Assembly: GCF_004010195.1 (NCBI RefSeq)
Contig: NC_057719.1
Span: 93,948,659-94,012,658, forward strand
DNA length: 64,000 nucleotides
Reading direction: 5' to 3'
From: Chiloscyllium plagiosum
Lineage: Eukaryota
Part shown: positions 10,723 through 51,860 of the stretch, one piece after another
Position numbering within the stretch: the stretch's first letter is position 1
Layout: every line of letters begins with the position of its first letter
Program-made: the position numbers and the translations under genes
The notes under the pieces: model-generated
Told to the model about the DNA's origin: nothing
The model's database searches: none
The model's input: the letters and a program-made list of their open reading frames with translations, nothing else

Positions 10723-11199
10723 GAGATAGCAGTACTAGCCACCGTGCCACCGTGCCACTGCTGTTACCCAGCTGCCTTTCTATGAAACAAAACTGTAACT
10801 CTGGTACTGAATAATATTTGTTGAATTGTAATGTCTTTTTTAAATAACGTATTCATTAAATGAAACTTTCCAGAACTGAACAGTCAGCTACACATACAAT
10901 GAATTCCTGCTGACTAATTCCCTGCTCAGTGTGCAGAGGGGACAGCCCCCAGTAATGGAGAGAGTCAGGACTGCAGATCCTGGTGATTAGAGTCAAAAGG
11001 TTTGGTGTCTTTACAGCACAGCGCGTCAGACAGCATCCGAGGAGCAGGAGAGTGAAAGCTTTCGACATTAACCCTCCATCAGGAAGGCATTGGTGCCTTC
11101 ACATTTTTTTCCATTCCATGATTCATGGAATATTTGGAACCATACTTTCTCAGAAGGGAAGCATTCTATATAGCCCTGAAATGGCAAGCAGTCAATCAG

Positions 11200-13279: not shown

Positions 13280-13750
13280 AATAAGCCTTGCAAGAATTGT
13301 AACAAATTCTACATCGGAAAAACACACAGAAAACTAGCAACCAGGATACGTGACCATCAATTAGCCCCAAAAAGTCATGACCACTGTCATTAGTATCATC
13401 ATATAGGGAGAAGAAAGTGCACCACTTTGACTGGATCTGCACATCCGTCCTAGGCCATTCCAAACAGAGACATGCCCAAGAATTCCGAGAAGCATGACAT
13501 TCCAACCGGAAATCCATCAACATACGCATTGATTTTGACTCCATCTACCACCCCTTGAGAAATAGAGCTGGAAATGTCATCATCAACACAGGAAATTACA
13601 TCACTAATTCAAAGAAGCCTAAACACTTAAATCACAAGTGGGACATAACACCAACACGTCACCGGCGTCTCATTGTTGACGTTCCCTAGTATGTGACAAA
13701 CCGTCTGAAAATAAACTCTACAGCTGAGCGAGCAAACTGACATCCAGAAT
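13280..13750 (+). mobile_element. Penelope-like GIY-YIG 3' fragment
   Basis: PCKNCNKFYIGKTHRKLATRIRDHQLA..HHFDW; related to 39427-39896. Confidence 0.8.
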
Positions 13751-14964: not shown

Positions 14965-15285
14965 AGGGGCAGCACTCCTGCCTCACAGCACTGGGACTCA
15001 GGTTTGATTCCAGCTTCGGGTAACTGTCTGTGTGGAGTTTGCACATTCTCGCCATGTCTGCGTGGGTTTCGTCCGGGTGCTCCGTTTTCCTCCCACAACA
15101 CAATTATATGCAGGGTATATGAATTGGCCATGTTAAATTGCCCGTAGTGTTCAGGGATATGTAGGTAAGGTGCATTCGTCAAAGGTAAATATAGGAGGAA
15201 TGGGTTTGGGTGAATTACTCTATGGAGGGTCATTGTGGACTTGTTGGGCCAAAGGGGCTGTTTCCACACTGTGGGGATTCTGTAT
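14965..15285 (+). mobile_element. HE1-like V-SINE
   Basis: tRNA-like head (GCCTCACAGC..GGTTTGATTCC), V-domain TGTCTGTGTGGAGTTTGCACATTCTC..GGGTGCTCCG, and a CR1-like tail GGGCCAAAGGGGCTGTTTCCACACTG. Confidence 0.82.
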
Positions 15286-19848: not shown

Positions 19849-22800
19849 ACGTGTGTATACAGCGAGTACAGTAGGTGGCTGAGGACACAACCGTGGTGTA
19901 CGGGAGTACAGTAGGGAGCTTAGGACACAGCCGTGGGTGCACAGGTAGAAAGGTAGGGGACTAAGGGCACATCCGCGGATGTATAGGGAGTACAGTATGG
20001 GATTGACGGCACAGCCCTGTGTGTGCAGGGAGTACAGTGGGGGGCTGTTGGCACAGCCGGGATGTACAGGTAGTACAGTAGGTGGCTGAGGACACAGCCG
20101 TGGTGTACGGAGAGTACAGTAGGGAGCTAAGGACACAGCCGTGGGTACACAGGTAGAAAGGTAGGGCGCTGAGGGCACATCCGCGGGTGTATAGGGAGTA
20201 CAGTAGGTGATTGACAGCACAGCTGCGTCAGCGCAGGGAGGACAGTGGGGGTCTGAGGTCACAGCTGGGATGTAAGGTAGTACAGTAGGTGGCTGAGGAC
20301 ACAGCCGTGCTGTAGAGGGAATACAGTCGGGGTCTGAGGACACAGCCGTGGGTGTACAGGTAGAACAGTAGGGGGCTGAGGGCACAGTAGTGTGCTGAGG
20401 GCACATCAGCGGGTGTATATGGAGCACAGTAGGGTATTGACGGCACAGCCATGTGTGTACAGGGAGTACTGTGGGGGGCTGACGGCACAGCCAGGATGTA
20501 CAGGGAGTATAGTAGGGGGCTGAGGGCACAGCCCTGTGTGTACTTGGAGTGGAGTAGGGGACTGAGGGCACAGAAGTGAGTTCATTGGGAGTAGAGTAAG
20601 GGGCGGAGGGCACAGCCATGTCTGTCCAGGGAGTAGAGTAGGGGGCTGAGGGCACAGCTGAGGTGTACTGGGGACACCATAGGGAGCTAAGGGCTCCACC
20701 GTGTGTATACGGGGTGTACCATAGGGGGCTGAGGACACAACCTTGGGTGAATTGGGAGTACAGTAAGGGATTGAAGCTAAAGCTGAGGTGTGCAGGGGCT
20801 ACAGTAGGGGGCTGAGGGCAAAGCCAGGGTGTATTGAGAGCACAGTAGGGGACTGAGGACACAGCCATGAGTGTACAGAGGGTGCAGTAGAGGACTGACG
20901 GCTCAGCCGCGTGGATAGAGGGTACAGTAGGACGCTGAGGGCACAGCCGTGGGTGTACAGGGCGTACAGTAGGGGGCTGAAGGCACAGGTTGTACAGACA
21001 GAGCATTAGGGGGCTGAGGACATAGCCGTGGTTGTACAGGAAGTACAGTAGGGGACTGAAGGCACAGCCGTGTGTGCACAGGGAGTACAGTTGGGGGACG
21101 CGGGCACAGCCATGTGTGTTCAGGGAATACAGTAGGGGGCTGAGGGCAAAATCAGAGTGAACTGAGAGCACAGTAAGGGGCTGAGGACACCGCTGTGGGA
21201 ATAAAGAGAGTACAGTAGGGGGCTGAGGGCACAGCCGTGGGTGCACAGGAAATACAGTGGGGAGCTGAGGGCACAGCGGAGGGCGTAGAGGGACTGCAGT
21301 AAGGGACTGAGGACACAGCCGTGGGTGTTCAGGATGTACAGTAGAGTGCTGAGGGCACAGCCGTGGTGTAAAGGGAGTACAGAAGGCGGCTTAGGGCTCA
21401 GTGGAGGGTGAACCGGGAGTACAGTAGGGGACTGAGGGCACAGCCGTGTGTGTACTAGGAGTACAGTAAGGGACTGAGGGCACAGCCGTGGTGTACAGGG
21501 AGTACAGTAGGAGGCTGAGGGCACAGCTGTGTGTGTACTAGGAGTAACGTAGGGGACTGAGGGCACAGCCGGGGTATACAGGGAGTACAGTAGGGGGCTG
21601 AGGGCACAGCAAAGTTTGTACAGGGAGTACAGTAGGGGACTGAGGTCATAGCAAAGCGTGCACATGGAGTGGAGTAGGGAGCGGAGGGCTCATCTGGGGT
21701 GCACAGGGAGTACAGTAGTGGGCTGAGAGCTCTGCCATCGTTGTACAGTGGGCACAGTGGGAGGCTGAGGACACAGCCATGAGTGTCCGAGGAGTAGAGT
21801 AGGGGGCTGTGGATACAGCTGTGGTTGCATAGGGGATCCAGTAGGGTGCTGAGGATGCAACAGTGGGTATACAGAGAGTAAATAGGGGACTGAGGACACA
21901 GCAGTGGCCGTTCTGGTGGAACAGTAGGGGCTGACAATGCAGCAGTGGGTGTACTGTGAGTACAATACGGGGCTGTGGACACATCAGTGTGGTACAGATA
22001 GTAGAGTAGGCGGCTCAGGGCACAGCGGCGCGTGTAGAGGGAGTACTGTAGGCGACTGAGAGCACAGCCGTGGTGTACAAGGTGTACAGCAGGCAGCTGA
22101 GTGCACAGTGGAGGGTGTACCGGGAGTACAGTAGGGACTGAGGGCACAGCCGTGTGTGTACAGGGGTTACAGTAGGGGGCTGAGGGCGCTGCAGTGCGTG
22201 TATGGGGAGTACAGAAGGGGGCTGAGAGCAAACCTGTGTGTATAAAGAGAGTATAGGAGGGGGTTGAGGGCACAGCTGTGTGAGCACAAGGTGTACAGAA
22301 TGGGGCTGAGGGCATAGCTGTGTGTGCAGGGAGTACATAATAGGTCTGAGTGCACAGCTTTGTGTGTACAGGGAGTAGAGTAGGGGTCTGAGGACACAGC
22401 CGTGTGCATAAAGAGAGTACAGGAGGGGGCTGACGACACAGCTGTCTGTGTGCAGGGTGTACAGAAGGGGCCTGAGGGCACAGCTCTGGGTGTACAGTGA
22501 GTACAGTATGTGACTAAGAGCATAGCGTCGCGTGTAGAGGGAGTGCAGTAGGCGACTGATGACACAGTCGTGGTGTACAGGGAGTACAGCAGGCAGCTGA
22601 GTGCACAGTGGAGGATGTGCCGGGCGTACAGTGGGGGACTGACGGCACAGCCGTGTGTGTACAGGAGTTACAGTAGGGGGCTGAGGGCGGTGCAGTGCGT
22701 GTATGGGGAGTACAGAAGGGGGCTGATGACACAGCTGTGTGTGTTCAGGGAGTACAGAAGGGGGCTGAGGGCATAGCTGTGTGTGTACAGGGAGTACAGT

Positions 22801-24540
22801 AGGGGGCTGAGGATACAGCTGTGTGTGTGCAGGGAGTACAGAAGGGGGCTGAGGGCATAGCTGTGTGTGTACAGGGAGTACAGAAGAGGGCTGAGGACAC
22901 AGCCATGTGTATAAAGAGAGTACAGGAGGGGGCAAAGTGCACAGCTGAGGTGTACATGGTGAATAGTAGGGGGCTGAGGGCACAGCTGTGTGTGCACAGG
23001 GAGTACAGAAGAGGGCTGAGGACACAGCCGTTTGTATAAAGAGAGTACAGGAGGGGGCTGAGGGCGCAGCTGTGTGAATACAGGGTGTACAGAAGTGGGC
23101 TGAGGGCACAGCTGTGTGTGCAGGGTGTACAGAATGGGTCTGAGTGCACAGCTGTGTGTGTACAGGGAGTACAGTAGGGGTCTGAGGACACAGCCGTGTG
23201 CATAAAGAGAGTACAGGAGGGGCTGAGGACACAGCTGTCTGTGTGCAGGTTGTACAGAAGGGGCCTGAGGGCACAGCTCTGGGTGTACAGTGAATACAGT
23301 ATGTGGCTAATGGCACAGCGGAGCGTGTAGAGGGAGTGCAGTCGGCGACTGATGGCACAGCCGTGGTGTACAGGGAGTACAGCAGGCAGTGGAGTGCACA
23401 GCGGCAGGTGTAACGGGAGTACAGTAGGGGACTGAGGGCACAGCCGTGTGAGTACAGGGGTTACAGTAGGGAGCTGAAGGCACAGTCATGGTGTACATAG
23501 AGTACAGAAGGGGCTGAGTGCACAACCGGGGGGCACAGGGAGTACAGTAGGGGGCTGAGGGGACAGCCGTGTGCGTATAGGGAGTACAGAAGGGGGATGA
23601 GGGCAAAAGCAGAGTGAACTGAGAGTACAATAGGGGCTGAGGACACAGCAGTGGCTGCACAGGGAATATATTAGGGGGATGATGGCACAGCTGTGTGCGT
23701 AGAGGGAGTATAGAAGGTGGCTGAGGGCACAGCCATGGGTGCACAAGAAGTACAGTGGGGAGCTGAGGGCATAGCGGAGGGCGTACAGGGAGTACAGTAG
23801 GGGACTGAGGGCACAGCTGTGTGTGTATTAGGAGCACAGTAGGGGAAAGAGGGCACAGCTAGGGTGTACAGGGAGTACAGTAGGGGACTGAGGTCACAGC
23901 AAAGGGTGTACATGGAGTACAGTAGTGAGCGGAGGGCTCATCTGGGGTGCACAGGGAGTACAGAAGTGGGCTGAGGGCACTGCCATCGTTGTACAGTGGG
24001 TACAGTGGAAGGCTGAGGACACAGCCATGAGTGTCCGTGGATTAGAGTAGGGGACTGTGGATACAGCCGTGGTTGCATAGGGGATACAGTAGGGTGCTGA
24101 CGATGCAACAGTGGGTATACAGGCAGTACATAGGGGGTGCGGACACAGCAGTGGCCGTCCTGGTGAACAGTAGGGGCTGACGATGCAGCAGTGGGTGTAC
24201 AGCGAGTACAATACGGGGATGTGGACACAGCAGTGTGGTACAGAGAGTACAGTAGGCCGCTCAGGGCACTGCAGCGCGTGTGGAGGGAGTACAGTAGGGG
24301 ACTGAAAACACACCGTGGTGTACAGGGAGTACAGCAGGCAGCTGAGTGCACAGCAAGGGTGTACTGGGAGTACAGTAGGGGACTGAGGGCACAGCCGTGT
24401 GTGTACAGGGGTTACAGTAGGGGGCTGAGGGAACAGTCATGGTGTACAGAGAGTACAGAAGGGGGCTGAGTGCCCAGCTGGGGTGTACAGGGAGTACTGT
24501 AGGGGCTGAGGGCACAGGTGTATGTGCACAGGGAGTACAG

Positions 24541-24604
24541 NNNNNNNNNNNNNNNNNNNNNNNNNNNNNNNNNNNNNNNNNNNNNNNNNNNNNNNNNNNN
24601 NNNN
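24541..24604. other. Assembly gap within array
   Basis: Run of N. Confidence 1.
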
Positions 24605-27231
24605 CTGGGGGCACAGCCGGGTGGTGCACAGGGAGTACAGTGGGGGGCTGAGGGCACAGCTGTGCGTGCATGGGGAGTACAGTAGGGGGCTGAGGGCAAA
24701 GCTGTGTGTGCACATGGAGTACAGTAGGGGGCTAAGGACAGAGCCGTGTGTATATAGAGATTACAGGAGGGGGCTGAGGGCACAGCTGTGTGTGTACAGG
24801 GAGTACCGTAGGGGGCTGAGGACAAATCGTGTGTATCAAGAGAATACAGGAGGGGGCTGGGGACACAGCTCTGTGTGTACAGGGGATACAGTATGCGGCT
24901 GAGGGCACAGCGAATGTGTAGAAGGATTACAGTAAGCGACTGACGGCACAGCCATGGTGTACAGGGAGGACAGCAGGCAGCTGAGTGCACAGCGGAGGGT
25001 GTACTGGGAGTACATTATGGGACTGAGGGCACAGCCGTGTGAGTACAGGTGTTACTGTTGGGAGGTGAAGGCACAGTCATTGGGTACAGAGAGTACAGAA
25101 GGGGGCTGAGTGCACAGCCGGGGTGTACAGGGAGTGCAGTATGGGGGCTGAGGGCACAGCTGTGTGTGCACAGGGAGTACAGTAGGGGGCTGAGGGCACA
25201 GCTGTGCGTGTATGGGGAGTACAGTAGGGGGCTGAGGGCACAGTTGTGTGTGCACAGCGAGTACAGTAGGGGGCTGAGGGCACAGCTGTGCGTGCATGGG
25301 GAGTACAGTAACGGGCTGAGGACATAACCAGGATGTACAGGGAGTACAGTAGGGGCTGAGGACACAGCTGTGTGCGTACAGAGAGTACTGTAGGGGTCTG
25401 AGGGCACAACTGGGATGTTTAGGGCGTTTAGCAGGGGACTGAGTGCACACCAGGGGTGTAAAGGAAGTACAGTAAGGGGCAGAGGACACAGCTGTGTGTG
25501 CACAGGGAGTACAGTAGCGGGCTGAGGGCACAACCATGGGTGTACAGGGGTTACAGTAGGGGGCTGAGGGAACAGTCATTGTGTACAGAGAGTACAGAAG
25601 GGGGCTGAGTGCACAGCCAGGGTGTACAGGGAGTGCAGTATGGGGCTGTTGGCACAGCTGTGTGTGCACAGGGAGTACAGTAGGGGGCTGAGGGCACAGC
25701 TGTGCGTGTATGGGGAGTACAGTAGGGGGCTGTGGGCACAGTTGTGTGTGCACAGCGAGTACAGTAGGGGGCTGAGGGCACAGCTGTGCGTGCATGGGGA
25801 GTACAGTAACGGGCTGCAGAGAGTACTGTAGGGGTCTGAGGGCACAACTAGGGTGTTTAGGGGGTTTAGCAGGGGACTGAGTGCACACCAGGGGTGTAAA
25901 GGAAGTACAGTAAGGGGCAGAGGACACAGCTGTGTGTGCACAGGGAGTACAGTAGGGGGCTGAGGGCACAGCTGTGCGTGTATAGGGAGTACAGTAGGGG
26001 GCTGAGGGCACAGTTGTGTGTGCACAGCGAGTACAGTAGGGGGTTGAGGACACAGCTGTGCGTGCATGGAGAGTACAGTAACGGGCTGAGGACACAGCTG
26101 TGTGTGTATACAGGGAGTACAGTAGGGGTTGAGGGCTCAGCTGTGTGCGTACAGAGAGTACAGTAGGGGGCTGAGGGCACAGCTGGGGTCGACGTGGAGT
26201 ACAGCAGGGGACTGAATGTACAGCCGGGGTGAACAGGGAACACAGTAGGGGGCTGTGGACACAGCCATGGGTGTACACGTGTTACAGTAGGGGGCTGAGG
26301 ACATGGCTGTGCGCGTATGGGGAGTGCAGTAGGGGCTGAGGACACAGCCAGGGTACAGACGGAGTACAGTAGGGTTTGAGGGCACTGTTGTGTGCGTACA
26401 GAGAGCACAGTAGGGGGCTTAGGGCAGCTGTGATCGGCATGGAGTACAGCAGGGGATTGAGTGCACTGCTGGGGTGTACAGGGAGTACAGTAGGGGGCTG
26501 AGGACACACCCATGGGCGTACAGGGTGTGGAGTAGGGGGCTGAGGGTACAGCCGCGGTGTACAATCAGTACAGTCGTGGGGTGAGGGCACAGTCGTGGCT
26601 GTACGGGGAGCACAGTAGAGGGCTAAGAACATAGCCGTGGGTGCACAGGGAGTACAGTAGGAGGTTGAGGACACAGCCATGGATGTACAGGGAGTACAGT
26701 ACGGGGCTAAGGGCACAACCGGGGTGTACGGGGAGAACAGTAGGGGGCTGAGGGCACAGCTGTGTGTGTACAGAGAGTACAATACGGTGCCTAGGGCACT
26801 GCCGGGGTGGACATTGAGAACAGCAGTGGATAAGGGCACAGTTGTGGATGCATGGGTAGTACAGTAGGGGGCTGAAGGCACAGCTGGGGTCTGCATGGAG
26901 TACAGTACGGGGCTGAGGGCACGGCCGAGGTGTAGAGGGAGTACAGTAGGGGGCTGAGGGCACAGCCATGGGTGTACAGGGAGTACATTAGGGGGCTGAG
27001 GACACAGCTGTGCGTTTATGCTAATTACAGTAAGGGAGCTGAGGACAGAGCCATGAGTGTACAGGGTGTATTGTAAGGAGCTGAGGAGATAGCCATGGGT
27101 ATACAAGGTGTAGAGTGGGGTCTGAGGACACAGCTGGGGTGTACATGGAGCACAGTACAGGGATGAGGGCACAGCCAGGGTGTAGTGGGAGTACAGTAGG
27201 GGGCTGAGGGCACAGCCGAGGTGTACATGGA

Positions 27232-27329
27232 TCATTCCTGAAGAAGGGCTTATGCCCGAAACTTCGATTCTTCTGTTCCTTGGATGCTGCCTGACCTGCT
27301 GCGCTTTTCCAACGACACATTTTCAGCTC
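27232..27329 (+). mobile_element. Penelope-like terminal fragment inserted in the array
   Basis: Reverse complement of the 4048-4145 and 9226-9320 termini, flanked by TGTACATGGA on both sides. Confidence 0.85.
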
Positions 27330-30300
27330 TGTACATGGAGTACAGTAGGGTGTAGAGGGAGTACAGTAAGGGGCTGTGGGCACAGCCATCGTTGTACAGC
27401 GGGTACAGTGGAGGTGCTGAGGACACAGCCATGAGTGTCCGGGGAGAACAGTATGGGGATATGGACACAGCCATGGTTGCATAGCGGGTACAGTAGGGTA
27501 CTGAGTGCATAGCCGTGGGCGGACAGGGAGGACAGTTGGGGGCTGAGTGCACAGCCAGGGTGTACAGGGAGTACAGTAAGGGGCTGAGGACACGGCCACG
27601 GGTGTACAGGGAGTACAGTAGGGGACAGAGGACACAGCTGTGTGTGTATGATAAGTACAGTAAGGGGCTGAGGAAACAGCCATGGGTGTACATGGAGTAC
27701 AGTATGGGGCTGAGGGCACAGCCAAGGTATAGAGGGAGTATAGTAGGGGGCTGAGGGCACAGCCGGGGTGTACATGGAATACAGTAGTGGACTGAGGTCA
27801 CAACCAGTGTGTACAGGGAGTACAGTAGGGGGCTGTGACCAGTGTGTACAGGGAGTACAGTAGGGGGCTGTGGGTAAAGCCATCGTTGTACAGCGGGTAC
27901 AGTGGGGGGCTGAGGACACAGCAGTGAGTATACGGGTAGAACAGTATGGCGCTAGGGACACAGCCGTGGTTGTACGGGGGTACAGTAGAGTGCTGAGGGC
28001 GTAGCCGTGGGCGTACATGGAGAACAGTTGGGGGCTGAGTGAACAGCCGGTGTGCAGAGGGGGTCCAGTAGGGGGCTCAGGACGCATCAGTGGGGATACA
28101 GAAGTTGCAGCAGGTGGCTGAGGGCACAGCAGAGGGTGTACAGGGAGTACAGTAGGGGACTGAGGGCACTGCAAAGCGTGTACAGGGAGTACAGTAGGTG
28201 ACTGAGGGCACATCTGGAGTGTACAGCGGTTACGGTATGGAGCTGAGGGCACAGTCATGGTGTACAGGGAGTACAGTACGTGGCTGAGGGCACAGCTGTG
28301 TGTGCACAGGGATTATAGTAAGGCGCTGAGGGCAGAGCCATGTTTGTACAGACGTTTCATTTGGGGGCTGAGGGCACAGCTGTGCATGTATGGGGAGTAC
28401 AGTAACGGGCTGAGGACAGAGCCGGGGTGTTCAGGGAGTACAGTAGGGGGCTGAGGGCACAGCGTGTGTGTACGGAGAGAAGAGTAGGGGGCTGAGGGCA
28501 CAGCAGGGGTGGATATGGAGTACGGTAGGGGATGAGGGCTCATCTGGGGTGTACAGGGAGTACAGTAGGGGACTGAGCGCACAGCAAAGGGTCTACAGGG
28601 AGTACTGTAGGGGACTGAGGGCACATCCGGAGTGTACAGGGGGTAGAGTCGCGGGCTGAAGGCATAGCCATGGGTGTACAGAGAGTACAGTAAGAGGCTG
28701 AGGGCACAGCCGGGGTGGAGAGGGAGTACAGTAGCGGGCTGCGGGCTCATCCGGGGTGTACAAGGAGTGCAGTAGTGGGCTGAGGGCACTGCCATCGTTG
28801 TACAGGTGGGTACAGTGGGAGGCTGAGGACACAGCCATGAGTGTCTGAGGAGTACAGTGGGGGGCTTTGGACACAGCTGTAGTTGCATTGGGGATAGAGA
28901 AGGGTGCTGAGGATGCAAAAGTGGGTATACAGGGAGTACGTCGGGGGCTGAGGACACAGTAGTGGCCATCCTGGTGGAACAGTAGGGGCTGAGGATGTAG
29001 CGGTGGGTGTACGGCGTGTACAGTATGGGGCTGTGGACACAGCCGTGATTGTATAGGAGTACAGTAGGTGGCTAAGGGTACAGCGGAGCGTGTAGAAGGA
29101 GTACAGTAGAGGACTTGGGCACAGCCGGGTTGTACAGGTGGTCCAGTAGGGGGCTGATAACACAGCTGTGGGGTACAGGGAATACAGCAGGCAGCTGAGT
29201 ACACAGCGGAGGCTGCACCAGGAGTGCAGTAGGGGACTGAGTGCATAACTGTGTGTGTACAGGGGTTACAGTATGGGGCTGAGGGCACAGTCATGGCATG
29301 CAGAGTGTACAGTAGGGTGCTGAGTGCACAGCCGGGGTGTACAGGGAGTACAGTAGGGGGCTGAGGGCACAGCTGTGTGTGCACAGGGGTTACAGTAAGG
29401 GGCTGAGGGCAGAGCAATGGGTGTACAGGGGTTACAGTAGGGGGCTGAGAACACAGCTGTGCATATATGGGGAGTATAGTAACGCGCTGAGGACACAGCC
29501 AAGATGTTCAAGGAGTACAGTAGGGAGCTGAGGGCACAGCTGGGATGGATATAGGGTACAGTAGGGGACTGAGGGCTCTTCCGGGGTGTACAGAGAGTAC
29601 AGTAGGAAGCTGTGGGCACAGCCGTCATTGTACAACGGGTACAGTGGGGAGTACAGTAGGGGACTAAGGGCACATCCATAGTGTACAGGGGGTAGGGTCG
29701 GGGGCTGAGGGCATAGCCATGGGTGTATAGAGAGTAAAGAATGGGGCTGAGGGCACAGCCAGGGTGGAGAGGGAGTACAATAGTGGGCTGAGGACACTGC
29801 CATCGTTGTACAGTGGGTACAGTGGGAGACTGAGGACACAGCCATGAGTGTCCGGGGAGTAAAGTAGGGGGCTGTGGACACAGCCGTGGTTGCATAGAGG
29901 ATAGAGTATGGTGCTGAGGACGCAACAGTGGGTGTACAGGGAGTACATAGGGGACTGAGGACACAGCAGTGGCCGTCCTGGTAGAATAGTAGGGGCTAAA
30001 GATGCAGCAGTGGGTGCACAGCGAGTACAGTATGGGGCTGTTGACAGAGACTTGGTTGTATAGGAGTATAATATGGGGATGAGGGCACAGCCGGCATGTC
30101 GAGGGAGTGAGTAGGTGACTGAGGGCACAACTGGAGTGTGCATGGAGTACAGTAGGCGGCTAAGGGCACAGTAGAGTGTGTAGAGGGTGTACAGTAGGGG
30201 CTGAGGACACAGCAGTAGCCGTACTGGTAGTACAGTAGGGGGCTGAGGACACAGCTGTGTGTGTACAGGGACTACAGTAGGGGATGAGGGCATAGAAGTG

Positions 30301-33300
30301 CATGCATGGGGATTACAGTAGGGGGCAAAGGGCGCAGCCATGGGTGGACACGGGTTACAGCAGGGGTCTGAAGACACAGCTGTGCATGTATGGGGTGTAC
30401 AGTAGAGGGCTGAGGACACAGCTGGGGTGTACATGGAGTACAGAACGGGGCTGAGGGCACAGTTGTGCGTGTATGATAAGTACAGTAAGAGGCTGAAGAT
30501 ACAGCCATATATGTACAAGGAGTATAGTCGGGGGCTGAGGGCACAGCTGGGGTGTACATGGAGTACAACACGGTGCAGAGAGCACAGTCAGGGTGTAGAA
30601 GGAGTACAGTAGGGGGCTGAGGGCACAGTTATCGTTGTACAGTGGCTACAGTGGGAGGCTGAGGACACAGCCATGAGTGTACAGGGAGTATAGTAGGCGG
30701 CTGTGGACACAGCCGTGGTTGTATGAGGGGGTACAGTAGGGTGCTGAGGACGCAGCAGTGGGTATACAGGGAGTACAGTAGGGGACTGAGGACACCGCTG
30801 TGTGTGAATGTGGTGCACAGTTGGGGGCTGAGGACACAGCCGGGGTGGACAGGGAGTATAATAGGGGGCTGAGGGCACAGCTGGCTTGTCAAGGGAGTAC
30901 AGTAGGTGGCTGAGGGCACAGCTGGGGTGTACATGGAGCACGGTAAGGGGCTGAGGGCACAGCTGGGATGTAGAGGGAGTACAGTACGGGGCTGATGGCA
31001 CAGCTGGGGTGTACATGGAGTACAGTATAGGGCTGAGGGCACAACCGTGTGTGTACAGGGAGTACAGTAGGGGGCTGAAGACACAGCTGTACATGTATGG
31101 GGAGTACAGTAAGAGGCTGAGGACACAGCCATGGGTGGACATGGAGTACAATAGGGGACTGCGGGCACAGCCGTGGGTGTACACGGGTGACAGTAGGTGG
31201 CTGAGGACACCGCTGTGCGTGTATGGGCAGTACAGTAAAGGGCTGAGGACACAGCCATGGGTGTACAGGGAGTACAGTAGGGGGGTGAGGGCACAGCTGA
31301 GGTGTACATGGAGTACAGTACGGGGCTGAGGTCTCAGCCATGTGTGTACAGGGAGTACAGTAGTGGGGTGAGGGCACAGCTGAGGTGTACATGGAGTACA
31401 GTACGGGGCTGAGGACACAACCATGGGTGTACAGGGAATGTAGTAGGGGTTTGAGGGTACAGCTGGTGTGTAAATGGAGTACAGTAGGGTACTGAGGTCA
31501 CAGACAGGTTGCACAGTAGGGTACAGCAGGAGGCTGAGGACATAGGAAAGAGTTTACAGGGTGTACAGTAAGGGATTAAGGGCATAGCCGTGGGCGTACA
31601 GCAAGTACAATTGGGGGCTGAGTGCACATAGTGGGGGTAGAAGGTGTACAGCTGACGGCTGAGTGCACAGTGGAGGGTGTACAGGGGGTACAGTAGGGGA
31701 CTGATGGCACAGCAAAGGGTGTACAGCGAGTACAGCAGAGGAGTGAGGGCACATCCGGAGTGTACAGGGAGTAGAGTAGGGGGCTGAGGGCACATCCGTG
31801 TTTGTACAGGGTGCACAGTAGAAGGCTGAGAGCACTGCTGTGGGTGTACAGTGAGTACAGTATAGGGCTGAGGACACAGCCGTGTATATACAGCGGGACA
31901 ATGGTGGCTGAGGGTACAGCCACGTTGTACAGTCAATACAATAGAGGGATGAGGACACAGCCGTGGGTGTACAGGGGGTAAAGTAGAGGAGTGCGGGCAC
32001 ATCCGGAGTGTACAGGGTATAGAGTAGGGGGCTGAGGCATGGCGTGGGTGTACAGGGAGTACAGTAGGGGGCTGAGGACACATCAGTGGGGCTATTGGAA
32101 GTGCAGCAGGTGGCTGAGGGCACAGCGGAGGGTGTACAGGAAGTACAGTATGGGACTGAGTGCACAGCAAAGGGTGTACAGCGAGTACAGTCGGGGATTG
32201 GGGCACATCAGGAGTGTACAGGGGAGAGTAGGGGGCTGAGGGTATAGCCATGGGTGTACGAGGGATTAGAGTAGGGGACTGAGGGCACATTCAGAGTGAA
32301 AAGGGTGTATAGTACAGGGCTGAGGGCATAGCCGAATGTGCACAGGTAGTGCAGTTGAGGGCTGAGGGCACTGTCGGGGTGTACGGGGGTCCAGTAGGGG
32401 GCTAAGGGCACATCAGTGGGGTTACAGGGAGTACGGTAGGTGGCTAAGGGTATAGCCGTTTTTGTACAGGGAGTACTGTTGGGGTCTGAGGGCACAGCTG
32501 GGGTGTACATGGACTACAGAACGGGGCTGAGGGCACAGCCATGGGGGTACAGGGAGTACAGTAGGGGGCTGAGGGCACAACCGTGTTTGTACAGGGTGCA
32601 CAGTAGAAGGCTGAGAGCACTGCTGTAGGTGTACAGTGAGTACAGTATAGGGCTGAGGACACAGCAGTGGATATACAGCGGTACAATGGTGGCTGAGGGT
32701 ACAGCCACGTTGTACAGTCAGTACAGTAGAGGGCTGAGGACACAGCCGTGGGTGTACAGGGGGTAAAGTAGGGAGCAGATGGCTTAGCCATAGATGTACA
32801 AGCAATGCAGTTAGTGGCTGAGGACACAGCCATGGATATACAGGTGATGCAATAGTGGGCTGAGGGCACAGGCATGATGTACATTCAATACAGTAGGGGG
32901 CTGAGGGCACAGTCGTGGCTGTACGGGGAGTTCAGAAGGGGGTTGAGGACACAGCCTTGGGTGTACACAGGGTACAGTAGGAGGCTGAGGACACAGCCGT
33001 GGGTGTACAGGGAGTACAGTAGTGGGCTAAGGGCACAGCCTTGGGTGTTCAGGGAGTACAGCAGTGGGCTGAGAACACAGACATGCGTGTACAGGGCGTA
33101 CAGTAGTGGGCTGAGGGCACAGCCGGAATGTACTGGGAGGACAGTAGGGGGCTGAGGGCACAGCTGTGGGTGTACAGGTGAACATTGTGGTCTGAGGGCA
33201 CAGTCGTGTGTGTAATGGGAGTGCAGTGGATGGCTGAGGACACAGCCGTAGGTGTACAGGGGGTACAGTAGACGGCAGAGGGCATAGCCGTGGGTGTACA

Positions 33301-35344
33301 GTCAGTACAGTAGGGGGCTGAGGGCACAGACGTGGCTATACAGGGTGCACAGTAGGGGGCTGAGGACACAGCCGTGGGTGTACAGGGAGTACAGTAGTGG
33401 GCTAAGGGCACAGCCTTGGGTGTTCAGGGAGTACAGCAGTGGGCTGAGAACACAGACATGCGTGTACAGGGCGTACAGTAGTGGGCTGAGGGCACAGCCG
33501 GAATGTACTGGGAGGACAGTAGGGGGCTGAGGGCACAGCTGTGGGTGTACAGGTGAACATTGTGGTCTGAGGGCACAGTCGTGTGTGTAAGAGAGGGCGT
33601 ATAGTAGTGAGCTGAGGGCTCATCTGTGGTGTACAGGCAGTACAGTAGTGGGCTGAGGGCACTGCCATCGTTGTACAGTGGGTACAGCATGAGGCTGAGG
33701 AAACAGCCATGAGTGTCCGGGAAGTACAGTAGGGGGCTGTGGACACAGCTGTGGTTGCATAGGGGATAGTGTAGGGTGCCGAGGACGGAATAGTGGGTAT
33801 GCAGGGAGTACATCAGGGGCTGAGGACACAGCAGTGGCCGTCCTGGTAGAACAGTAGGGGCTAAGGATGCAGCAGTGGGTGTCCGGCGAGTACAGTAAGG
33901 GGCAGTGGACACAGCCGTGATTGTATAGGGAGTACAGTAGGCGGCTAAGGATACAGCGGAGTGTATAGAGGGTATACAGTAGGGGGCTGAGGAGACAGCA
34001 GTGGCCGTACTGGTAATACAATAGGGGGCTGAGGACACAGCTGTGTGTGTACAGGGAGTACAGAAGGGGATGAGGGCACAGTTGTGCATGCATGGGGAGT
34101 ACAGTAGGGGGCTGAGGGCACAGCCGTGGGTGGACAAGGGTTACAGCAGGGGGCTGAGGGCACAGCTGTGCATGTATGGGGAGTACAGTAGAGGGCTGAG
34201 GACACAGCCAGGGAGTAGAGGGAGCGCAGTAGGGGCTGAGGGCACAGCTGGGTTATACATGGAGTACAGAACGGGGCTGAGGGCACAGTTGTGGTGTACA
34301 GGGAATACAGCAAGGGGTTGAGGGCACAGCAGAGGCCTTACTGGTAGCACAGTAGGTGGCTGAGGGCACAGCTATGGGTGTACACAGGTTACAGCAGGGG
34401 GCTGAGAACACAGCCATGGGTGTACATGGAGTACAGTCGGGGGCTGAAGGCACAGCTGGGGTGTACATGGAGTACAGTATGTGGGTGAGGGCACAGCCGG
34501 CGTGTAGAGGGAGAAAAATAGGGGGCTGAGGGCACAACCGGGGTGGACATGGAGTACAGTAGTTGACTGAGGTCACAGCCGGGGTGTACACATGGTTCAG
34601 TAGGGGGCTGATGACACAGCAGTGGGGTACAGGGAGTACAGTATGCAGCTGAGTGCACAGCGGAGGGTGTACCTGGAGTGCAGTAGGGGACTGAGTGCAC
34701 AACCGTGTGTGTACGGGGGTTATGGTATGGGGCTGAGGGCACAGTCAAGGTGTACAGAGAGTACAGAAGGGTGCTGAGTGCACAGCCGATGTGTACAGGG
34801 AGTACAGTAGGAGGCTGAGGATACAGTAGTGGGTGTACAGAGAACAGTACGGTGCCTCGGGCATAGCCGGGGTGGACATGGAGAACAGTAGGGGACTGAG
34901 GGCTCATCCTTGGTGTGCAGGGACTACAGTAGGCGGTTGTGGGCACAGAGGTCGTTGTACAGCGGGTACAGTGGGGGCTGAGAACACAACCATGTGTGTA
35001 CGGGGAGTACAGTAAGGAGCTGTGGACACAGCCGTTGTTTTCCAGGGGGTGCAGTAGGGTGATGAGGACCCAGCAATTGGTATACTGGGAGTACAGTAGG
35101 GGGCTGAGGACACAGCAGTAGCTGTACTGGTAGTACAGTAGTGGTCTGAGGACACAGCTGTGTGTGTACAGGGAGCACAGCAGTGGGTGAGGGCACAGTT
35201 GTGCATGCATGGGTAGTACAGTAGGGGGCTGAGGTCACAGCCTTGGGTGTACAGGGAGTATATTAGTGGGCTGAGGACGCAGCTGTGCGTTTACACTAAG
35301 TACAGTAAAGGGGCTGAGGACACAGCCATGGGTGTACAGGGTTT

Positions 35345-35460
35345 CGTCATTCAATGTGATCATGGCTGATCATCCTGAAACAGTATCCTGTTCCTGCCTT
35401 ATGTCCGTGACCCTTGATTCCACAATCCTTGCGAGCTCTACCCAACTCATTCTTAAATGA
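35345..35460 (-). mobile_element. CR1-type 3' tail fragment inserted in the array
   Basis: Non-array sequence. Minus strand reads GGAATCAAGGGTCACGG..GGCAGGAACAGG..GATCAGCCATGATCACATTGAATG, typical of LINE/SINE tails. Confidence 0.7.
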
Positions 35461-38400
35461 AGGGGCTGATAACACAGCCATGGGTGTACACGGTGTAGCG
35501 TAGCGGGCTGAGGGCACAGTTGGGGAGTACATGGAGCACGTACGGGGCTGAGGGCACAGCCAGGGTGTATATGGAGTACAGTAGGGGACTGAACCGGGGT
35601 GTAGAGGGAGGACAGTAAGGGGCTGTGGGCACAGCCATCGTTGTACAGCCGGTACAGTGGGGGGCTGAGGACACAGCCGTGAGTGTACGGGGAGAATAGT
35701 ATGGGGATATCGACACAGCCGTGGTTACATAGCGGGTACAGTAGGGTTCTAAGGGCATAGCCGTGGGCGTACAGGGAGCACGGTTGGGGGCTGAGTGCAC
35801 GGCCAGGGTGTACAGAGGGTCCAGTAGGGGGCTGAGGACACATCAGTGGGGGTACAGGGAGTACAGCAGGCGGCTGATGGCACAGTGGAGGGTGTACAGG
35901 GAGTACAGTCGGGGACTGAGGGCACAGCAAAGGGTCTACTGGGAGTACAGTAGGGGACGAAGGGCACATCTGGAGTGTACAGGGGTTCGAGCCGTGGGCT
36001 GAATGCATAGCCATGGGTGTACAGAGATCACAGTATGGGGCTGAGGGCACAGCCGGGTTGGAGAGGGCGTATAGTAGTGAGCTGAGGGCTCATCTGTGGT
36101 GTACAGGCAGTACAGTAGTGGGCTGAGGGCACTGCCATCGTTGTACAGTGGGTACAGCATGAGGCTGAGGAAACAGCCATGAGTGTCCGGGGAGTACAGT
36201 AGGGGGCTGTGGACACAGATGTGGTTGCATAGCGGATAGTGTAGGGTGCTGAGGACGGAATAGTGGGTATACAGGGAGTACATCAGGGGCTGAGGACACA
36301 GCAGTGGCCGTCCTGGTAGAACAGTAGTGGCTAAGGATGCAGCAGTGGGTGTACGGCGAGTACAGTATGGGGCTGTGGACACAGCTGTGGTTGCATAGCG
36401 GATAGTGTAGGGTGCTGAGGACGGAATAGTGGGTATACAGGGAGTACATCAGGGGCTGAGGACACAGCAGTGGCCGTCCTGGTAGAACAGTAGTGGCTAA
36501 GGATGCAGCAGTGGGTGTACGGCGAGTACAGTATGGGGCTGTGGACACAGCTGTGGTTGCATAGCGGATAGTGTAGGGTGCTGAGGACGGAATAGTGGGT
36601 ATACAGGGAGTACATCAGGGGCTGAGGACACAGCAGTGGCCGTCCTGGTAGAACAGTAGTGGCTAAGGATGCAGCAGTGGGTGTACGGCGAGTACAGTAT
36701 GGGGCTGTGGACACAGCTGTGGTTGCATAGCGGATAGTGTAGGGTGCTGAGGACGGAATAGTGGGTATACAGGGAGTACATCAGGGGCTGAGGACACAGC
36801 AGTGGCCGTCCTGGTAGAACAGTAGTGGCTAAGGATGCAGCAGTGGGTGTACGGCGAGTACAGTATGGGGCTGTGGACACAGCCGTGGTTGTATAGGGAG
36901 TACAGAAGGCGGCTAAGGACACAGCGGAGTGTATAGAGGGTTTACAGTAGGGGGCTGAGGACACAGCAGTGGCCGTCCTGGTAGAACAGTAGTGGCTAAG
37001 GATGCAGCAGTGGGTGTACGGCGAGTACAGTATGGGGCTGTGGACACAGCAAGGACACAGCCATGGGTGTACATGGAGTACAGTCGGCGGCTGAGGGCAC
37101 AGCCGGAGTGTAGAGGGAGAAAAATAGGGGGCTGAGGGCACAACCGGGGTGTACATGGAGTACAGTAGTTGACTGAGGTCACTGCCGGGGTGTACAGGTG
37201 GTTCAGTAGGGGGCTGATGACACAGCAGTGGGGTACAGGGAGTACAGTATGCAGCTGAGTGCACAGCGGAGAGTGTACCTGGAGTGCAGTAGGTGACTGA
37301 GTGCACAACCGTGTGTGTACGGGGGTTATGGTATGGGGCTGAGGGCACAGACATGGTGTACAGAGATTACAGAAGGGTGCTGAGTGCACAGTTCGGGTGT
37401 ACAGGGAGTACAGTAGGGAGCTATGGGCACAGCCGTGGTGGATACGGAGTACAATAGGGGATGAGGGCTCATCCGGGATGTGCAGGGAGTACAGCAGGGG
37501 ACTGAGGGCGCAGCAAAGGGTCTACAGGGAGTAAAATAGGAGACTGAGGGCACATCCGGACTGTACAGGGGGTAGAGTCACGATCTGAAGGCATAGCCAT
37601 GGGTGTACAGAGAGTACAGTATGGGGCTGAGTGCACAGCTGGGGTGGAGAGGGAGTACAGTAATGGGCTGAAGAATCATCTGTGGTGTACAGGGAGTACA
37701 GTAGTGGGCTGAGGGCACTGCCATCGTTGTACAGTGGGAGGCTGAGGACACAACCGTGGGGGTGTACAGTGAGTATAGTAGGGGGCTATGGGCACAGCAT
37801 TCGGTGTACAGGGAGTACAGCAGTAGGCTGAGAACACAGACATGGGTGTACAGGGAGTACAGTAGGGTGCTGAGGGCACAGGCAGGGTGTACTGGAAGTA
37901 CAGTAGAGGGCTGAGGGCACAGCTGTGAGTGTACAGGTGAACGTTGAGGTCTGAAGACCCAGCCGTGTGTGTACTGGGAGTACAGTAGGTGGCTGAGGAG
38001 ACAGCCGTGGGTGTACAGGGGGTCAGTAGAGGGCATAGGGCATAGCTGTGGGTGTACAAGGAGTGCGGTTGGTGGCTGAGGACACAGCCATGCGTATACA
38101 GGGGGTACAATAGGGGGCTGAGGGTACAGCCACGGAGTACAGTCAGTACAGTAGATGGCTGAGGGAACAGTCATGGCTGTACGGGGAGCACAGAAGTGGG
38201 CTGAGGACACAGCCGTGGGTGTACAGGGAGTACAGTAGGAGGCTGAGGACACAGGTGTGGGTGTACAGGAAGTACAGTAGGAGGCTGAGGACAAAGCCTT
38301 GCGTGTACAGGGAGTACAGTAGGGGGCTGAGGGCACAGCTGTGGTTGTACTGGTGAACAATGGGTGACTGAGGGCCCAGCCATGTGTGTATTGGGAGTGC

Positions 38401-39019
38401 AGGAGGTGGCTGAGGATACAGCCGTGGGTTTACATGTAGTTCAGCAGGTGTTAGAGGGCACAGCCACTCGTGTACAGGGTGTACAGTAGGGGGCTGTAGA
38501 CACAGCCGTGTGAGCGCACGGAGTACAGTAGGGAGCAAAATGCACAGTCTTGGGTGTACAGGGAGTGCGGTAGGTAGCTGAGGACATAGCCCTGGGTTTA
38601 CATGTAGTACAGTAGGGGACTGAGGGCACAGCCACTCATGTACAGAGAGTACAGTAGGGGGCTGAGGACACAACCGTGGGAGTACAGAAAGTAAAGTAGG
38701 GGCTGAGAGCACAGCCGTGGGTGTACAGGGAGTACAGTAGGGGCTGAGGCCACAGCCTTGGGTGTACTGCTGGAGTGTACAGGGAGTCAGTAGGGGGCTG
38801 AGGGCACAGCTGTGGGTGTACAGCGTGTACAGTATGGGGCTAAGGTCACAGCCGGGATGGACAAGGAGCACCGTAGGAGGCAGAGGACACAGCCATGGGT
38901 GTTTAAGGAATATAGTAGGGTACTGAGGTCACAGCCATATGTGTAAAGGGAATACAGTTGGGGGCTGTGGATACAGCCGTGTGTGTATGGGGAGTACAGC
39001 AGGGGGCTAAGGACGCAGC

Positions 39020-40240
39020 CGTGGTTGTACAGTGAGTACAGTAGAGGGCTGAGAACACATCCTCCAGGAGCTCCAGTGTTGAGTGGTATTGTGTTGAAGG
39101 GGCAGATACCTATCTTCACTGATTGCGATCTGTTGGTCAGAAACCTGGGGATCCAGTTGCAGAGGATGGAGCTGTGTTCAAGGTTACGGAGTGTTAAGAT
39201 CAGTCTGGAGGGGACCGTGGTGTTGAATTTGGAGATGTATTCAATGAGCAGGAGTCTGGTATAGGTGTCCTTGTTGTACAGAGTTTCCAGGTATGAATGC
39301 AAGTCTCGGGATATGGCATCAATTGTGAAACCGTAACATCAGTAGGTAAATTATAGTGGATCAGGGCAGGCTGGGAGATCGGAGGTGAACAAGGCCAGAC
39401 GCAGCCTCTCGAAGCACTTCATGTTTGTTGTGGTTCTGTTCGCCGACCTGGGAATTTGTGTTGCAGACGTTTTGTCCCCTGCCTAGGTGAAATCCTCAGT
39501 GCTTGGGAGCCGCCTGTGAAGCGCTTCTTTGATGTTTCCTCCGGCATTTATAGTGGTTTGTGTCTGCTGCTTCCGATTGTCAGTTCCAGCTGTCCGCTGC
39601 AGTGGCCGGTATGTTGGGTCCAGGTCGATGTGTTTGTCGATAGAATCTGTGGCTGAGTGCCATGCCTCTCGGAATTCCCTGGCTGTTCTCTGTTCTCTCT
39701 CCTATAATAATAGTGTTGTCCCAGTCGAATTCATGTTGCTTGTCATCTGCATGTGTAGCTACTAAGGATAGCTGGTCGTGTCGTTTCGTGGCTAGTTGGT
39801 GTTCATGGACACGGATCGTTAGCTGTCTTCCTGTTTGTCCTATGTAGTGTTTTGTGCAGTCCTTGCATGGGATTTTGTACACTACGTTGGTTTTGCTCAT
39901 GTTTATTGGTGTCTGAACCACTGGGCGGTAGTCATTAAGGCACGTTCCATGGGTTTTCTAACTTACAAGGATGATGTTGGTCTTCCTGAAGCTGTTTGGG
40001 ACTTTGGCGTGTAGAAGGGAGAAGCTGAAGGTGTTTGTGAATACCTTTGCCAGTTGGTCCACACAGGGTCTGAGTGCACAGCCGAGAACAACTTCCAGGC
40101 CCGTTGCTTTCCTTGAGTTGAATCCCAGGAAGACTGATTATGTCTGCAGCGGTGACAGTGGGCACAGGTACATCTGAGGCTGTCGGGGCAGGTTTCAGCC
40201 TGGCAGACGCAGTCATCCATTATAGACATCCCCTCCCCCA
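39020..40240 (-). mobile_element. Rex1/Babar-type non-LTR retrotransposon, RT N-terminal half (decayed, interrupted by a Penelope-like fragment)
   Basis: Fragments read DQLAKVFTNTFSFSL..PNSFRKTNII..LNDYRPV, then MKCFERL, then DTYTRLLLIEYISKFNT..LCNWIPRFLTNRSQSVKIG..LNTGAPGGCVLSPLLYSLY. Confidence 0.85.
39427..39896 (-). mobile_element. Penelope-like element 3' fragment (GIY-YIG endonuclease)
   Basis: NVVYKIPCKDCTKHYIGQTGRQLTIRVHEHQLATKRHD. Flanked by direct repeat TCATGTTT (39419-39426, 39897-39904). Confidence 0.88.
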
Positions 40241-40499
40241 CCTCCCTTCGTCATCATCAACACAGAGTGACATTGGTTGGTGTGAGCACTACACATTTCA
40301 TGTTAAGACAGAGTGACAGCAATAGATGGGATTGTGCACCATCAAGTTTTGTGTCACCATAATGGGGTAAGTTAACAACAAATAGGGCGCACAGTGTGCT
40401 CGAACTGTCAGTGTTGCAGGGAGTGAAGACCATACAAATATAATTCCAGTCAAGCCACTGTTTTAACCTAAATGGAGTCAAGCACTTCAGTCAGGAAGA

Positions 40500-51824: not shown

Positions 51825-51860
51825 ACTTCTGTTGAATTATTAAATGCAACTTTGAGATTT

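What the first reader, a model, noticed from the sequence alone, without database searches (positions are those of the whole stretch)
19851..39302. A 19-kb satellite born from a LINE reverse-transcriptase motif, still attached in frame to its parent element
Seen: the minus-strand ORF 38787-39302 reads through ordinary Rex1/Babar-type RT sequence (..LNTGAPG-GCVLSPLLYSLYNH). It then repeats that 14-codon segment instead of continuing to the catalytic FADD motif, and the same 42-bp unit continues, diverging, to 19851. Known: the motif corresponds to PQGCVLSPLLYSLYTHDCV in this RT family. Inference: similarity between the QGCV and HDCV codons 42 bp apart seeded slippage or unequal crossover. This locus keeps the junction between parent element and satellite. 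TE-derived satellites are known in general, but I do not recall one described from this RT motif.
Basis: partly seen in the sequence, partly recalled or inferred. Interest (0 to 1): 0.85.

Follow-up and report, generated by a model that had tools for sequence, protein, structure and literature searches.

The report
LINE-derived 42-bp tandem array
A 19-kb stretch of a shark-type genome is a decayed tandem array of a 42-base unit copied from a retrotransposon's reverse-transcriptase gene, a clean but ordinary example of a mobile element seeding a satellite repeat.

Summary
Window 19846-39062 is one uninterrupted, single-orientation array of about 462 units of 42 bp. A 64-N assembly gap sits inside it, so its true length and the phase across the gap are unknown.

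The unit consensus translates to GCALSPLLYSLYTH. A variant carried by 168 of 455 units translates to GCVLSPLLYSLYTH, which is 14/14 identical to the motif before FADD in LINE reverse transcriptases. The best of 300 shuffles reached 9/14.

On the minus strand a decayed, 5'-truncated LINE RT fragment runs seamlessly and in frame into the first unit at 39062.

Not supported:
- There is no divergence gradient away from the junction.
- The LINE 3' half (FADD onward) is absent from the window. The far end abuts another retroelement.
- Read data indicate further tandem copies of the unit elsewhere in the genome, so this locus cannot be called the birthplace.

The array is non-coding and CpG-decayed, about 16% from its consensus, with a few recent local duplications.

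LINE ORF2-derived satellites are already in the literature (PMC9659126). This is a new member of a known kind, of modest interest.

The parts
39902..40240 (-). Upstream piece of the decayed, 5'-truncated LINE reverse-transcriptase fragment
   Evidence: tblastn: relative P0098 residues 425-503 match 40134-39898, 46% identity, E 1.5e-14. The outer limit near 40240 is my reading of the sequence.
39426..39901 (-). Very high-copy retroelement fragment (GIY-YIG-like ORF) inserted into the LINE fragment
   Evidence: ORF 39580-39921 has a sub-threshold Pfam GIY-YIG hit (E 0.048). Raw-read depth is 20-840 per orientation against 0-2 in the flanks. Hundreds of loose ends sit exactly at 39425/39426 and 39901/39903.
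39063..39425 (-). LINE RT fragment leading into the motif (...FNT..P...LCNWI..FLT.R.QSV...LNTGAP)
   Evidence: tblastn: P0098 residues 499-639 match 39434-39015, 49% identity, E 2.6e-30. phmmer found 3471 relatives at E<=1e-3, best 2e-42. Alignment A1. Pfam RVT_1 is only sub-threshold (16.3 bits against a cutoff of 29.6).
39021..39062 (-). First unit: the RT motif itself (GCVLSPLLYSLYNH), seamless with the LINE upstream and the array downstream
   Evidence: It is 0.86 identical to the array consensus.
24605..39020 (-). Proximal part of the 42-bp array
24541..24604 (.). Assembly gap (N) inside the array. Continuity, phase and length across it are unknown.
19846..24540 (-). Distal part of the 42-bp array, ending a few letters into a further unit
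36305..36802 (-). Three identical copies of a 166-bp (four-unit) block: a recent local amplification or an assembly effect
   Evidence: successive copies are 1.0 identical and the flanking copies 0.78-0.83.
33591..33890 (-). 300-bp segment duplicated at 36061-36360 with 97.7% identity (a recent exchange within the array)
19259..19588 (+). GIY-YIG-like ORF of another retroelement on the opposite strand. Its downstream end abuts the far end of the array.
   Evidence: ORF. The Pfam GIY-YIG hit is sub-threshold (E 0.065). The resemblance to Penelope-like elements is recalled, not tested.

Best explanation
The region is a non-coding tandem array (minisatellite or satellite type) whose 42-bp unit was copied from 14 codons of a LINE reverse-transcriptase gene. 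Those codons are G-C-V-L-S-P-L-L-Y-S-L-Y-T-H, just upstream of the catalytic FADD.

Shown:
- The unit's identity with that motif.
- The seamless, in-register join to a decayed LINE copy on one side.
- The uniform orientation of the units.
- The decay pattern of the array.

Inferred:
- A first 42-bp tandem duplication arose at DNA level by replication slippage or unequal exchange, possibly helped by the short direct repeat G-C-V / D-C-V that brackets exactly 14 codons.
- Unequal sister-chromatid exchange then expanded it to hundreds of units.
- The array then decayed neutrally, with two unit subtypes, CpG loss, indels and stops in all frames. It has seen occasional local re-duplication since.
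- Its far end lost, or never had, the LINE 3' half and now abuts another retroelement.

The unit also occurs in tandem elsewhere in the genome. This array is therefore one member of a LINE-derived repeat family. Whether it is the founding locus is open. No function is indicated.
For: - Array: (214 core hits against 0 expected).
- Motif identity: the consensus is 13/14 and the column-8 T variant (168 of 455 units) 14/14 identical to the RT motif of relatives. In 300 shuffles the maxima were 6 (137), 7 (139), 8 (22) and 9 (2).
- Register: the LINE fragment aligns to relatives up to the motif and the array starts there.
- Relatives continue THDCV...FADD, whereas the window repeats the unit.
- Non-coding decay: 44-57 stops per frame in about 4819 codons of the proximal part. 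Divergence from the consensus is 0.165, with ts 1581 and tv 1564. The CpG columns 42 and 1 are the most variable (0.30 and 0.48). CpG o/e is 0.34. Of 236 ungapped units, 44 carry a stop, and mean amino-acid identity to the motif is 0.69.
- Old bulk: pairwise unit identity is 0.69-0.715 at all lags from 1 to 400.
- Recent local events.
- Independent support for the junction region: Logan contigs of run X15 lie on 38794-39084 (9 differences) and 39056-39454 (13 differences). A contig of run X1, from another study, lies on 39111-39454 with the same 13 differences.
- Other arrays: raw-read depth summed over both orientations is 36-87 at near-consensus bins against about 0-2.5 in unique bins. Also, 14 (X19) and 32 (X20) reads carry a 42-bp 'goes back' joint. 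This array holds only 10 places within 1 mismatch of that 37-mer and no adjacent pair of them.
Against: - The DNA-level match between unit and family consensus, the direct repeat, and the relative ages of LINE flank and array are therefore untested.
- The X15 contig bridges 39062/39063 with only 22 letters on the LINE side, under the tool's 31-letter rule. No long read was seen.
- The contigs differ from the window by about 3%, so they may come from an allele or a paralogous copy.
Part of the excess depth could come from single RT motifs of dispersed LINE copies. The tandem joints cannot.
- The Pfam RVT_1 hit is below threshold.
- A protein search with an array ORF found nothing at E<=1e-5 among 4804 candidates.
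Confidence: 0.85

Rival explanations
1. This locus is the single birthplace of the satellite, the LINE copy at 39063-40240 is the actual parent, and other arrays, if any, spread from here.
For: - The junction is seamless, in frame and in register.
- The LINE flank is about as decayed at protein level (49-60% identity to relatives) as the units (0.69 to the motif).
- The ancestral Val-type (column-8 T) units are somewhat commoner in the proximal 200 units (84 of 200) than in the distal 262 (85 of 262).
Against: - No LINE 3' half lies beyond the far end or anywhere in the window.
- There is no divergence gradient.
- The junction unit's private changes are at background frequency in the array.
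- Reads indicate other, more homogeneous tandem copies elsewhere.
Confidence: 0.35
2. Secondary junction. The array belongs to a satellite family born elsewhere. It became joined to this LINE copy later, by homologous or unequal exchange at the shared 42-bp motif. Such an exchange necessarily gives an in-register junction.
For: - Other tandem copies exist in the genome.
- The LINE 3' half is absent.
- Units next to the junction are no closer to the junction unit than distant ones.
Against: - It needs an extra event.
- The homology available in a single LINE copy is only 42 bp.
- There is no discontinuity in decay between the LINE flank and the first units.
Confidence: 0.2
3. Assembly artefact. 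The array, its length or its junction with the LINE is produced by mis-joining of repeat-rich reads.
For: - A scaffold gap lies inside the array.
- Three perfectly identical 166-bp blocks stand at 36305-36802.
- One 67-bp bin (38367-38433) has zero or near-zero depth in all four runs.
Against: - Units are individually diverged (about 0.70 pairwise), so most of the array is effectively unique sequence.
- Contigs from two other studies are collinear with 38794-39454.
- Orientation and unit structure are uniform on both sides of the gap.
Confidence: 0.04
4. Functional G-rich element of the immunoglobulin region: a switch-region-like, R-loop or G-quadruplex-forming recombination target or boundary next to the IgM cluster.
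For: - GC skew on the + strand is +0.39 to +0.46 across the array.
- There are 69 G4-type motifs (loops 1-12) in 19.2 kb against 2 in the other 44.8 kb. AGCT density is 6.1 per kb against 3.3.
- IgM C1-set exons lie 10-19 kb away.
Against: - The array lies downstream of the IgM constant exons, not in a J-C intron.
- It is C-rich on the IgM sense (minus) strand.
- WGCW density is ordinary (20.0 against 18.3 per kb).
- The composition follows directly from the antisense of the RT codons.
- Units decay freely.
Confidence: 0.03

Closest known systems
LINE ORF2-derived satellite DNAs: PROsat of Phodopus roborovskii, Pvc20 of Phoca vitulina, chicken HinfI/SCR1 from CR1. Listed in the table of the review PMC9659126 (passages read).
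   Same: A tandem repeat whose monomer is homologous to part of the coding region of a non-LTR retrotransposon.
   Different: Here the unit is only 42 bp, exactly 14 codons of one RT motif. The host is a cartilaginous fish with a CR1/Rex1-like LINE. One array still abuts a LINE copy in register. I did not read the primary papers on those satellites, so their unit sizes and junctions are not compared.
Retrotransposon-derived tandem repeats as a frequent source of plant satellites (Lathyrus sativus, PMC7004042; search listing and start of abstract only), and PisTR-A from the Ogre 3' UTR (named in PMC9659126).
   Same: Short tandem repeats arise inside a retroelement and are then amplified into long arrays.
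   Different: Per the passage of PMC9659126 read, the PisTR-A repeats come from the hypervariable, non-coding 3' UTR of an LTR element. This one arises in a conserved catalytic-domain coding segment of a LINE.
Ordinary vertebrate minisatellites expanded by slippage and unequal exchange (general knowledge, recalled).
   Same: Unit of tens of bp, strong strand asymmetry in G/C, local higher-order duplications and indel-rich decay.
   Different: The array is at least 19 kb, longer than typical minisatellites, and the source of its unit is identifiable.

Membership tests
TE-derived satellite or tandem repeat | Head-to-tail array of many copies of one unit | tested here: met
   447-462 units, single orientation.
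TE-derived satellite or tandem repeat | Unit homologous to a segment of a transposable element beyond chance | tested here: met
   13/14 and 14/14 residues identical to the RT motif, against a maximum of 9/14 in 300 shuffles. tblastn of relative P0010 gives 92 segments in the window, only one of them reaching outside the array (39281-38985, across the junction). DNA-level comparison with intact family copies was not possible.
TE-derived satellite or tandem repeat | Physical junction of the array with the source element | tested here: met
   Met on the 39062 side, in register and in frame. Not met on the 19846 side, where no LINE 3' half exists.
Satellite DNA in the strict sense (abundant, several long arrays) | Further arrays elsewhere in the genome | tested here: inconclusive
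   Excess read depth and 14-32 reads per run with tandem joints cannot be supplied by this array. No other array was seen as sequence, and neither copy number nor location is known.
LINE (non-LTR retrotransposon) reverse transcriptase | RT domain homology | tested here: met
   phmmer found 3471 relatives at E<=1e-3, best 2e-42, and they carry FADD and the downstream RT motifs. Pfam RVT_1 alone is sub-threshold.
   No TE reference library was on hand. The label rests on recall. The review PMC6274825 (passages read) says only that Rex1 is close to CR1 and Babar.
Immunoglobulin switch region | Lies upstream of constant exons and is G-rich on the non-template strand of the Ig transcription unit | tested here: not met
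   The array lies downstream of the minus-strand C1-set exons and is C-rich on that strand.
Expressed repeat protein | Long open frame maintained across units | tested here: not met
   44-57 stops per frame, longest open stretch 409 codons, and 226 of 462 units with indels.

The most novel reading that the evidence does not exclude
The 14-codon RT segment is an intrinsic satellite seed. It is bracketed by the short direct repeat G-C-V / D-C-V, so copies of this LINE family repeatedly and independently sprout 42-bp arrays at many loci of the genome. The resulting arrays are extremely GC-skewed and dense in G-quadruplex motifs, and they influence recombination or replication in the regions where they sit, such as this immunoglobulin cluster neighbourhood.
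Probability: 0.12. Interest if true: 0.55.

Novelty: new member of a known kind. Interest (0 to 1): 0.3.

Why it matters
The locus is a very legible example of how a coding segment of a mobile element becomes a long tandem repeat. The source motif, the register and one junction are all still readable. It could serve as a test case for dating and modelling array growth in slowly evolving cartilaginous-fish genomes. It also flags a repeat family that annotation pipelines may mislabel as LINE coding sequence. It does not change what is known about the origin of satellites.

Tried and rejected
Approaches that led nowhere:
- My first greedy unit segmentation drifted out of phase. I replaced it with a wraparound alignment.
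- blastn self-comparison of the array gave nothing usable. I replaced it with an ungapped diagonal scan.
- Looking for the LINE 3' half found nothing. No FADD or FSDD occurs in six frames. No tblastn match beyond residue 639 of P0098 exists anywhere in the window. The two other RT matches, 411-49 and 11240-11734, are different families at 24-30% identity.
A 28-nt boundary pattern found 0 metagenome contigs. A protein-guided metagenome scan gave 7 loci at only 26-32% identity, which I did not use.
- Looking for ORFs of other arrays in the 5.8-billion-protein collection gave 4804 word-sharing candidates, none at E<=1e-5.
- None of the 150 best RT relatives has two motifs within 30 residues, so there is no sign of the same duplication in those proteins.
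- Rfam at gathering thresholds found 0 families in the window.
- Earlier-findings look-ups by sequence and by several word sets were blank.

Readings rejected: a switch-region reading, because position and strand are wrong, and a repeat protein, because stops occur in all frames.

Literature. Searches found no paper on a shark or Rex1-derived satellite of this kind. These searches cover only the held library. Supplements were not consulted.

Full report
What is there.

Tandem Repeats Finder finds one large array between 19846 and 39053. It reports it as period 42 (20384-39053, 447.4 copies, 67% matches, 5% indels) and as multiples 83 and 125. The region stands out in composition. G+C is 0.56-0.58 and GC skew is +0.39 to +0.46 on the + strand from 20001 to 38000. 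Windows outside the array (1-18000 and 40001-64000) show G+C of 0.33-0.46 and skew between -0.21 and +0.34.

A wraparound alignment to a cyclic unit splits the array into 462 units, 455 of them with at most 6 gapped columns. Read on the minus strand, the column-majority consensus translates to GCALSPLLYSLYTH. Column 8 is C in 270 units and T in 168 units, and the T form gives GCVLSPLLYSLYTH. A 23-nt core with up to 3 mismatches matches 214 times against 0 expected. Every listed match is on the minus strand inside the array, with 14 rows not shown. A six-frame search found no copy of the peptide outside 19800-39100.

The assembly gap.

The Ns at 24541-24604 lie inside the array. On the minus strand the unit stops at column 14 before the gap and resumes at column 22 after it. 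Sixty-four Ns are not 7+42n, and the gap length is only an estimate. Phase, frame, continuity and the real length of the array are therefore unknown. Both sides have the same orientation, unit and level of decay.

The junction.

The minus-strand ORF 38787-39302 (171 aa) exists as described. About 80 residues of RT-like sequence end in ...LNTGAPGGCVLSPLLYSLYNH. They are followed in frame by GCVLSPLLYSPYTH, GCIHSPQLYSLYTY, GCDLSTLLYSLNTH and so on.

Pfam gives only a sub-threshold RVT_1 match (E 0.0084, 16.3 bits, cutoff 29.6). A phmmer search of 1.84 billion representatives with residues 1-94 gave 3471 proteins at E<=1e-3, 734 at E<=1e-10 and 4 at E<=1e-30. The relatives I read continue ...LNTGAPQGCVLSPLLYSLYTHDCV....KFADDTTV.... 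In a 12-sequence alignment, G, L, S, P, L, L, Y, S and L of the motif are invariant.

tblastn of relative P0098 places its residues 425-503 at 40134-39898 and residues 499-639 at 39434-39015. Nothing beyond residue 639 matches anywhere in the window, and no FADD or FSDD occurs in any frame. So a 5'-truncated, decayed LINE copy stops exactly at the motif, and the array begins there, in register.

The LINE fragment is itself split at 39426-39901 by a fragment with a weak GIY-YIG match. That fragment is extremely abundant in the genome. Raw-read depth reaches up to about 840 per orientation, and loose ends pile up at its two borders.

More than chance.

The consensus unit matches the RT motif of the relatives at 13 of 14 residues, and the column-8 T variant matches at 14 of 14. 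In 300 shuffles of the unit, searched in all frames and rotations against six RT proteins, the best scores were 6 (137 shuffles), 7 (139), 8 (22) and 9 (2). The unit also sits at the very point where the adjoining LINE reaches that motif. Together these settle the direction of descent, because the motif is a conserved part of RTs and the array is the derivative.

State of the array.

Units average 0.82 identity to the consensus and 0.73 to the junction unit. Pairwise identity is 0.69-0.715 at every lag from 1 to 400, with a faint excess at even lags. Identity to the junction unit does not fall with distance (bins 0.70-0.76, Spearman rho -0.06, p 0.23). The bulk looks like one old expansion that decayed evenly.

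Divergence from the consensus is 0.165 (1581 transitions, 1564 transversions), or 0.148 without columns 42, 1 and 8. The CpG at the unit boundary is the most variable site, and CpG o/e is 0.34. All three frames carry 44-57 stops in about 4819 codons. Of 236 ungapped units, 44 contain a stop, and mean amino-acid identity to the motif is 0.69. Nothing suggests a coding constraint. The in-frame run at the junction is simply what a 14-codon period gives until the first indel.

Superimposed on this are younger local events:
- A 166-bp four-unit block is present as three identical copies at 36305-36802.
- A 300-bp segment at 33591-33890 recurs at 36061-36360 with 97.7% identity.
- Several 230-650-bp stretches share 82-91% identity.

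The far end.

Array similarity stops at about 19846. Beyond it, on the + strand, lies an ORF (19259-19588) with a sub-threshold GIY-YIG match. Its motif resembles Penelope-like elements, which is my recollection and was not tested. No array and no LINE 3' half lie beyond it. A LINE copy that grew an internal array in place should keep its 3' half after the array. Here that half has been lost, was never present, or lies outside the window or in the gap at 9519-10264.

Independent data.

Runs of the same coded species were found. Four were laid on 38300-40300 at 95% likeness.

Contigs of X15 lie on 38794-39084 (291 bp, 9 differences) and 39056-39454 (399 bp, 13 differences). A contig of X1, from another study, lies on 39111-39454 with the same 13 differences. 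The first contig carries six units plus 22 letters of the LINE side. That is short of the tool's 31-letter rule for bridging, but it overlaps the next contig by 29 letters. This is moderate support for the junction, not proof, and no long read was available. The shared difference of about 3% may be an allele or a paralogous copy. One X20 read carries it, while X19 reads at two of the sites carry the window's letters.

Two near-consensus bins draw far more raw reads than unique bins. Summed over both orientations, 38300-38366 reaches 56 (X19) and 87 (X20), and 38702-38768 reaches 36 and 52. Unique bins reach about 0-2.5. In addition, 14 (X19) and 32 (X20) reads show a joint that goes back 37 letters with 5 letters between, which is two adjacent 42-bp units.

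Within the window the 37-mer concerned has only 10 places at up to 1 mismatch and no adjacent pair. The 30-40-mers of 38702-38768 have at most 3-6 places. The array itself cannot supply these reads, so tandem copies of the unit closer to the consensus exist elsewhere in the genome. Their number, location and flanks are unknown. The tool's minimum partial-fit length is not stated, so part of the plain depth could come from single motifs in dispersed LINE copies.

How it most likely arose.

The period equals the spacing of two similar tripeptide-coding sites in the relatives, G-C-V at the start of the unit and D-C-x fourteen codons later. THDCV follows the motif in 28 of 99 motif occurrences among the 150 best relatives. 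THDCT follows in 20, and only one occurrence has G-C. A first duplication by slippage or unequal exchange between these short repeats is plausible. It is inferred only, because I could not obtain DNA of intact copies.

The units carry GGC rather than GAC at the boundary (column 2 is G in 389 of 455 and A in 43, which is the background G>A level). A crossover inside the shared CTGTGT would have left GAC. Either the breakpoint lay just upstream, or the GGC form was fixed during later exchange.

Growth to hundreds of units by unequal sister-chromatid exchange is the standard model (established knowledge). The local blocks show that such exchange has continued.

Surroundings.

C1-set immunoglobulin exons lie on the minus strand at 51861-52310 (E 1e-21, with a secretory-tail-like end) and 55030-55287. 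The array lies about 10 kb downstream of that gene and is C-rich on its sense strand, so it is not placed like a switch region. Its + strand is dense in G-runs, with 69 G4-type motifs against 2 in the rest of the window. That is a by-product of the antisense of the RT codons.

Comparison with what is known.

Transposable elements as sources of tandem repeats are well documented. The table of the review PMC9659126 (passages read) lists LINE ORF2-derived satellites: PROsat, Pvc20 and chicken HinfI/SCR1 from CR1. The review also notes that non-coding, already repetitive parts of TEs are the commoner source.

My searches and the Rex review (PMC6274825, passages read) turned up no case from this RT motif or from a cartilaginous fish. 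The held library is partial and supplements were closed. The clade label Rex1/Babar is recalled and could not be tested. I could not see its sequence.

Verdict.

Two claims remain open: that this is the parent locus, and the proposed seeding mechanism. This is a new member of a known kind. It is tidy and didactic but not surprising to a specialist.

Noticed in passing
window 39426-39901: A 476-bp fragment with a weak GIY-YIG match splits the LINE copy. It is among the most abundant sequences in the genome: raw-read depth reaches up to about 840 per orientation where unique sequence gets about 1, with sharp borders marked by hundreds of loose ends. Coded organisms B and C hold about 13% of the words of 38600-40400, probably from this element.
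   Followed up: partly
window 39056-39454 and 38794-39084: Contigs from two other studies (runs X1 and X15), and one X20 read, carry the same set of about 13 differences (about 3%) from the window. X19 reads carry the window's letters at two of the sites. This is either a divergent allele or a paralogous copy of the LINE/array junction.
   Followed up: no
window 36305-36802: Three perfectly identical 166-bp (four-unit) blocks sit inside an otherwise roughly 70%-pairwise array. This is either a very recent local amplification or an assembly effect.
   Followed up: partly
window 49150-58781 (exons checked at 51861-52310 and 55030-55287, minus strand): Immunoglobulin C1-set exons of an IgM-type constant gene, one with a secretory-tail-like end, lie about 10 kb upstream of the array on the same strand.
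   Followed up: partly
window 19851-39062, + strand: There are 69 G-quadruplex-type motifs (loops 1-12) in 19.2 kb against 2 in the remaining 44.8 kb, with GC skew about +0.43. This follows from the antisense of the RT codons.
   Followed up: partly
window 9452-10750 (-), 13139-13393 (+), 18338-19850 (+): Several further retroelement fragments carry YIDD-type RT or GIY-YIG-like ORFs. One includes a 129-bp tandem duplication at 18338-18605 (98% matches). One of the fragments spans the N gap 9519-10264.
   Followed up: no
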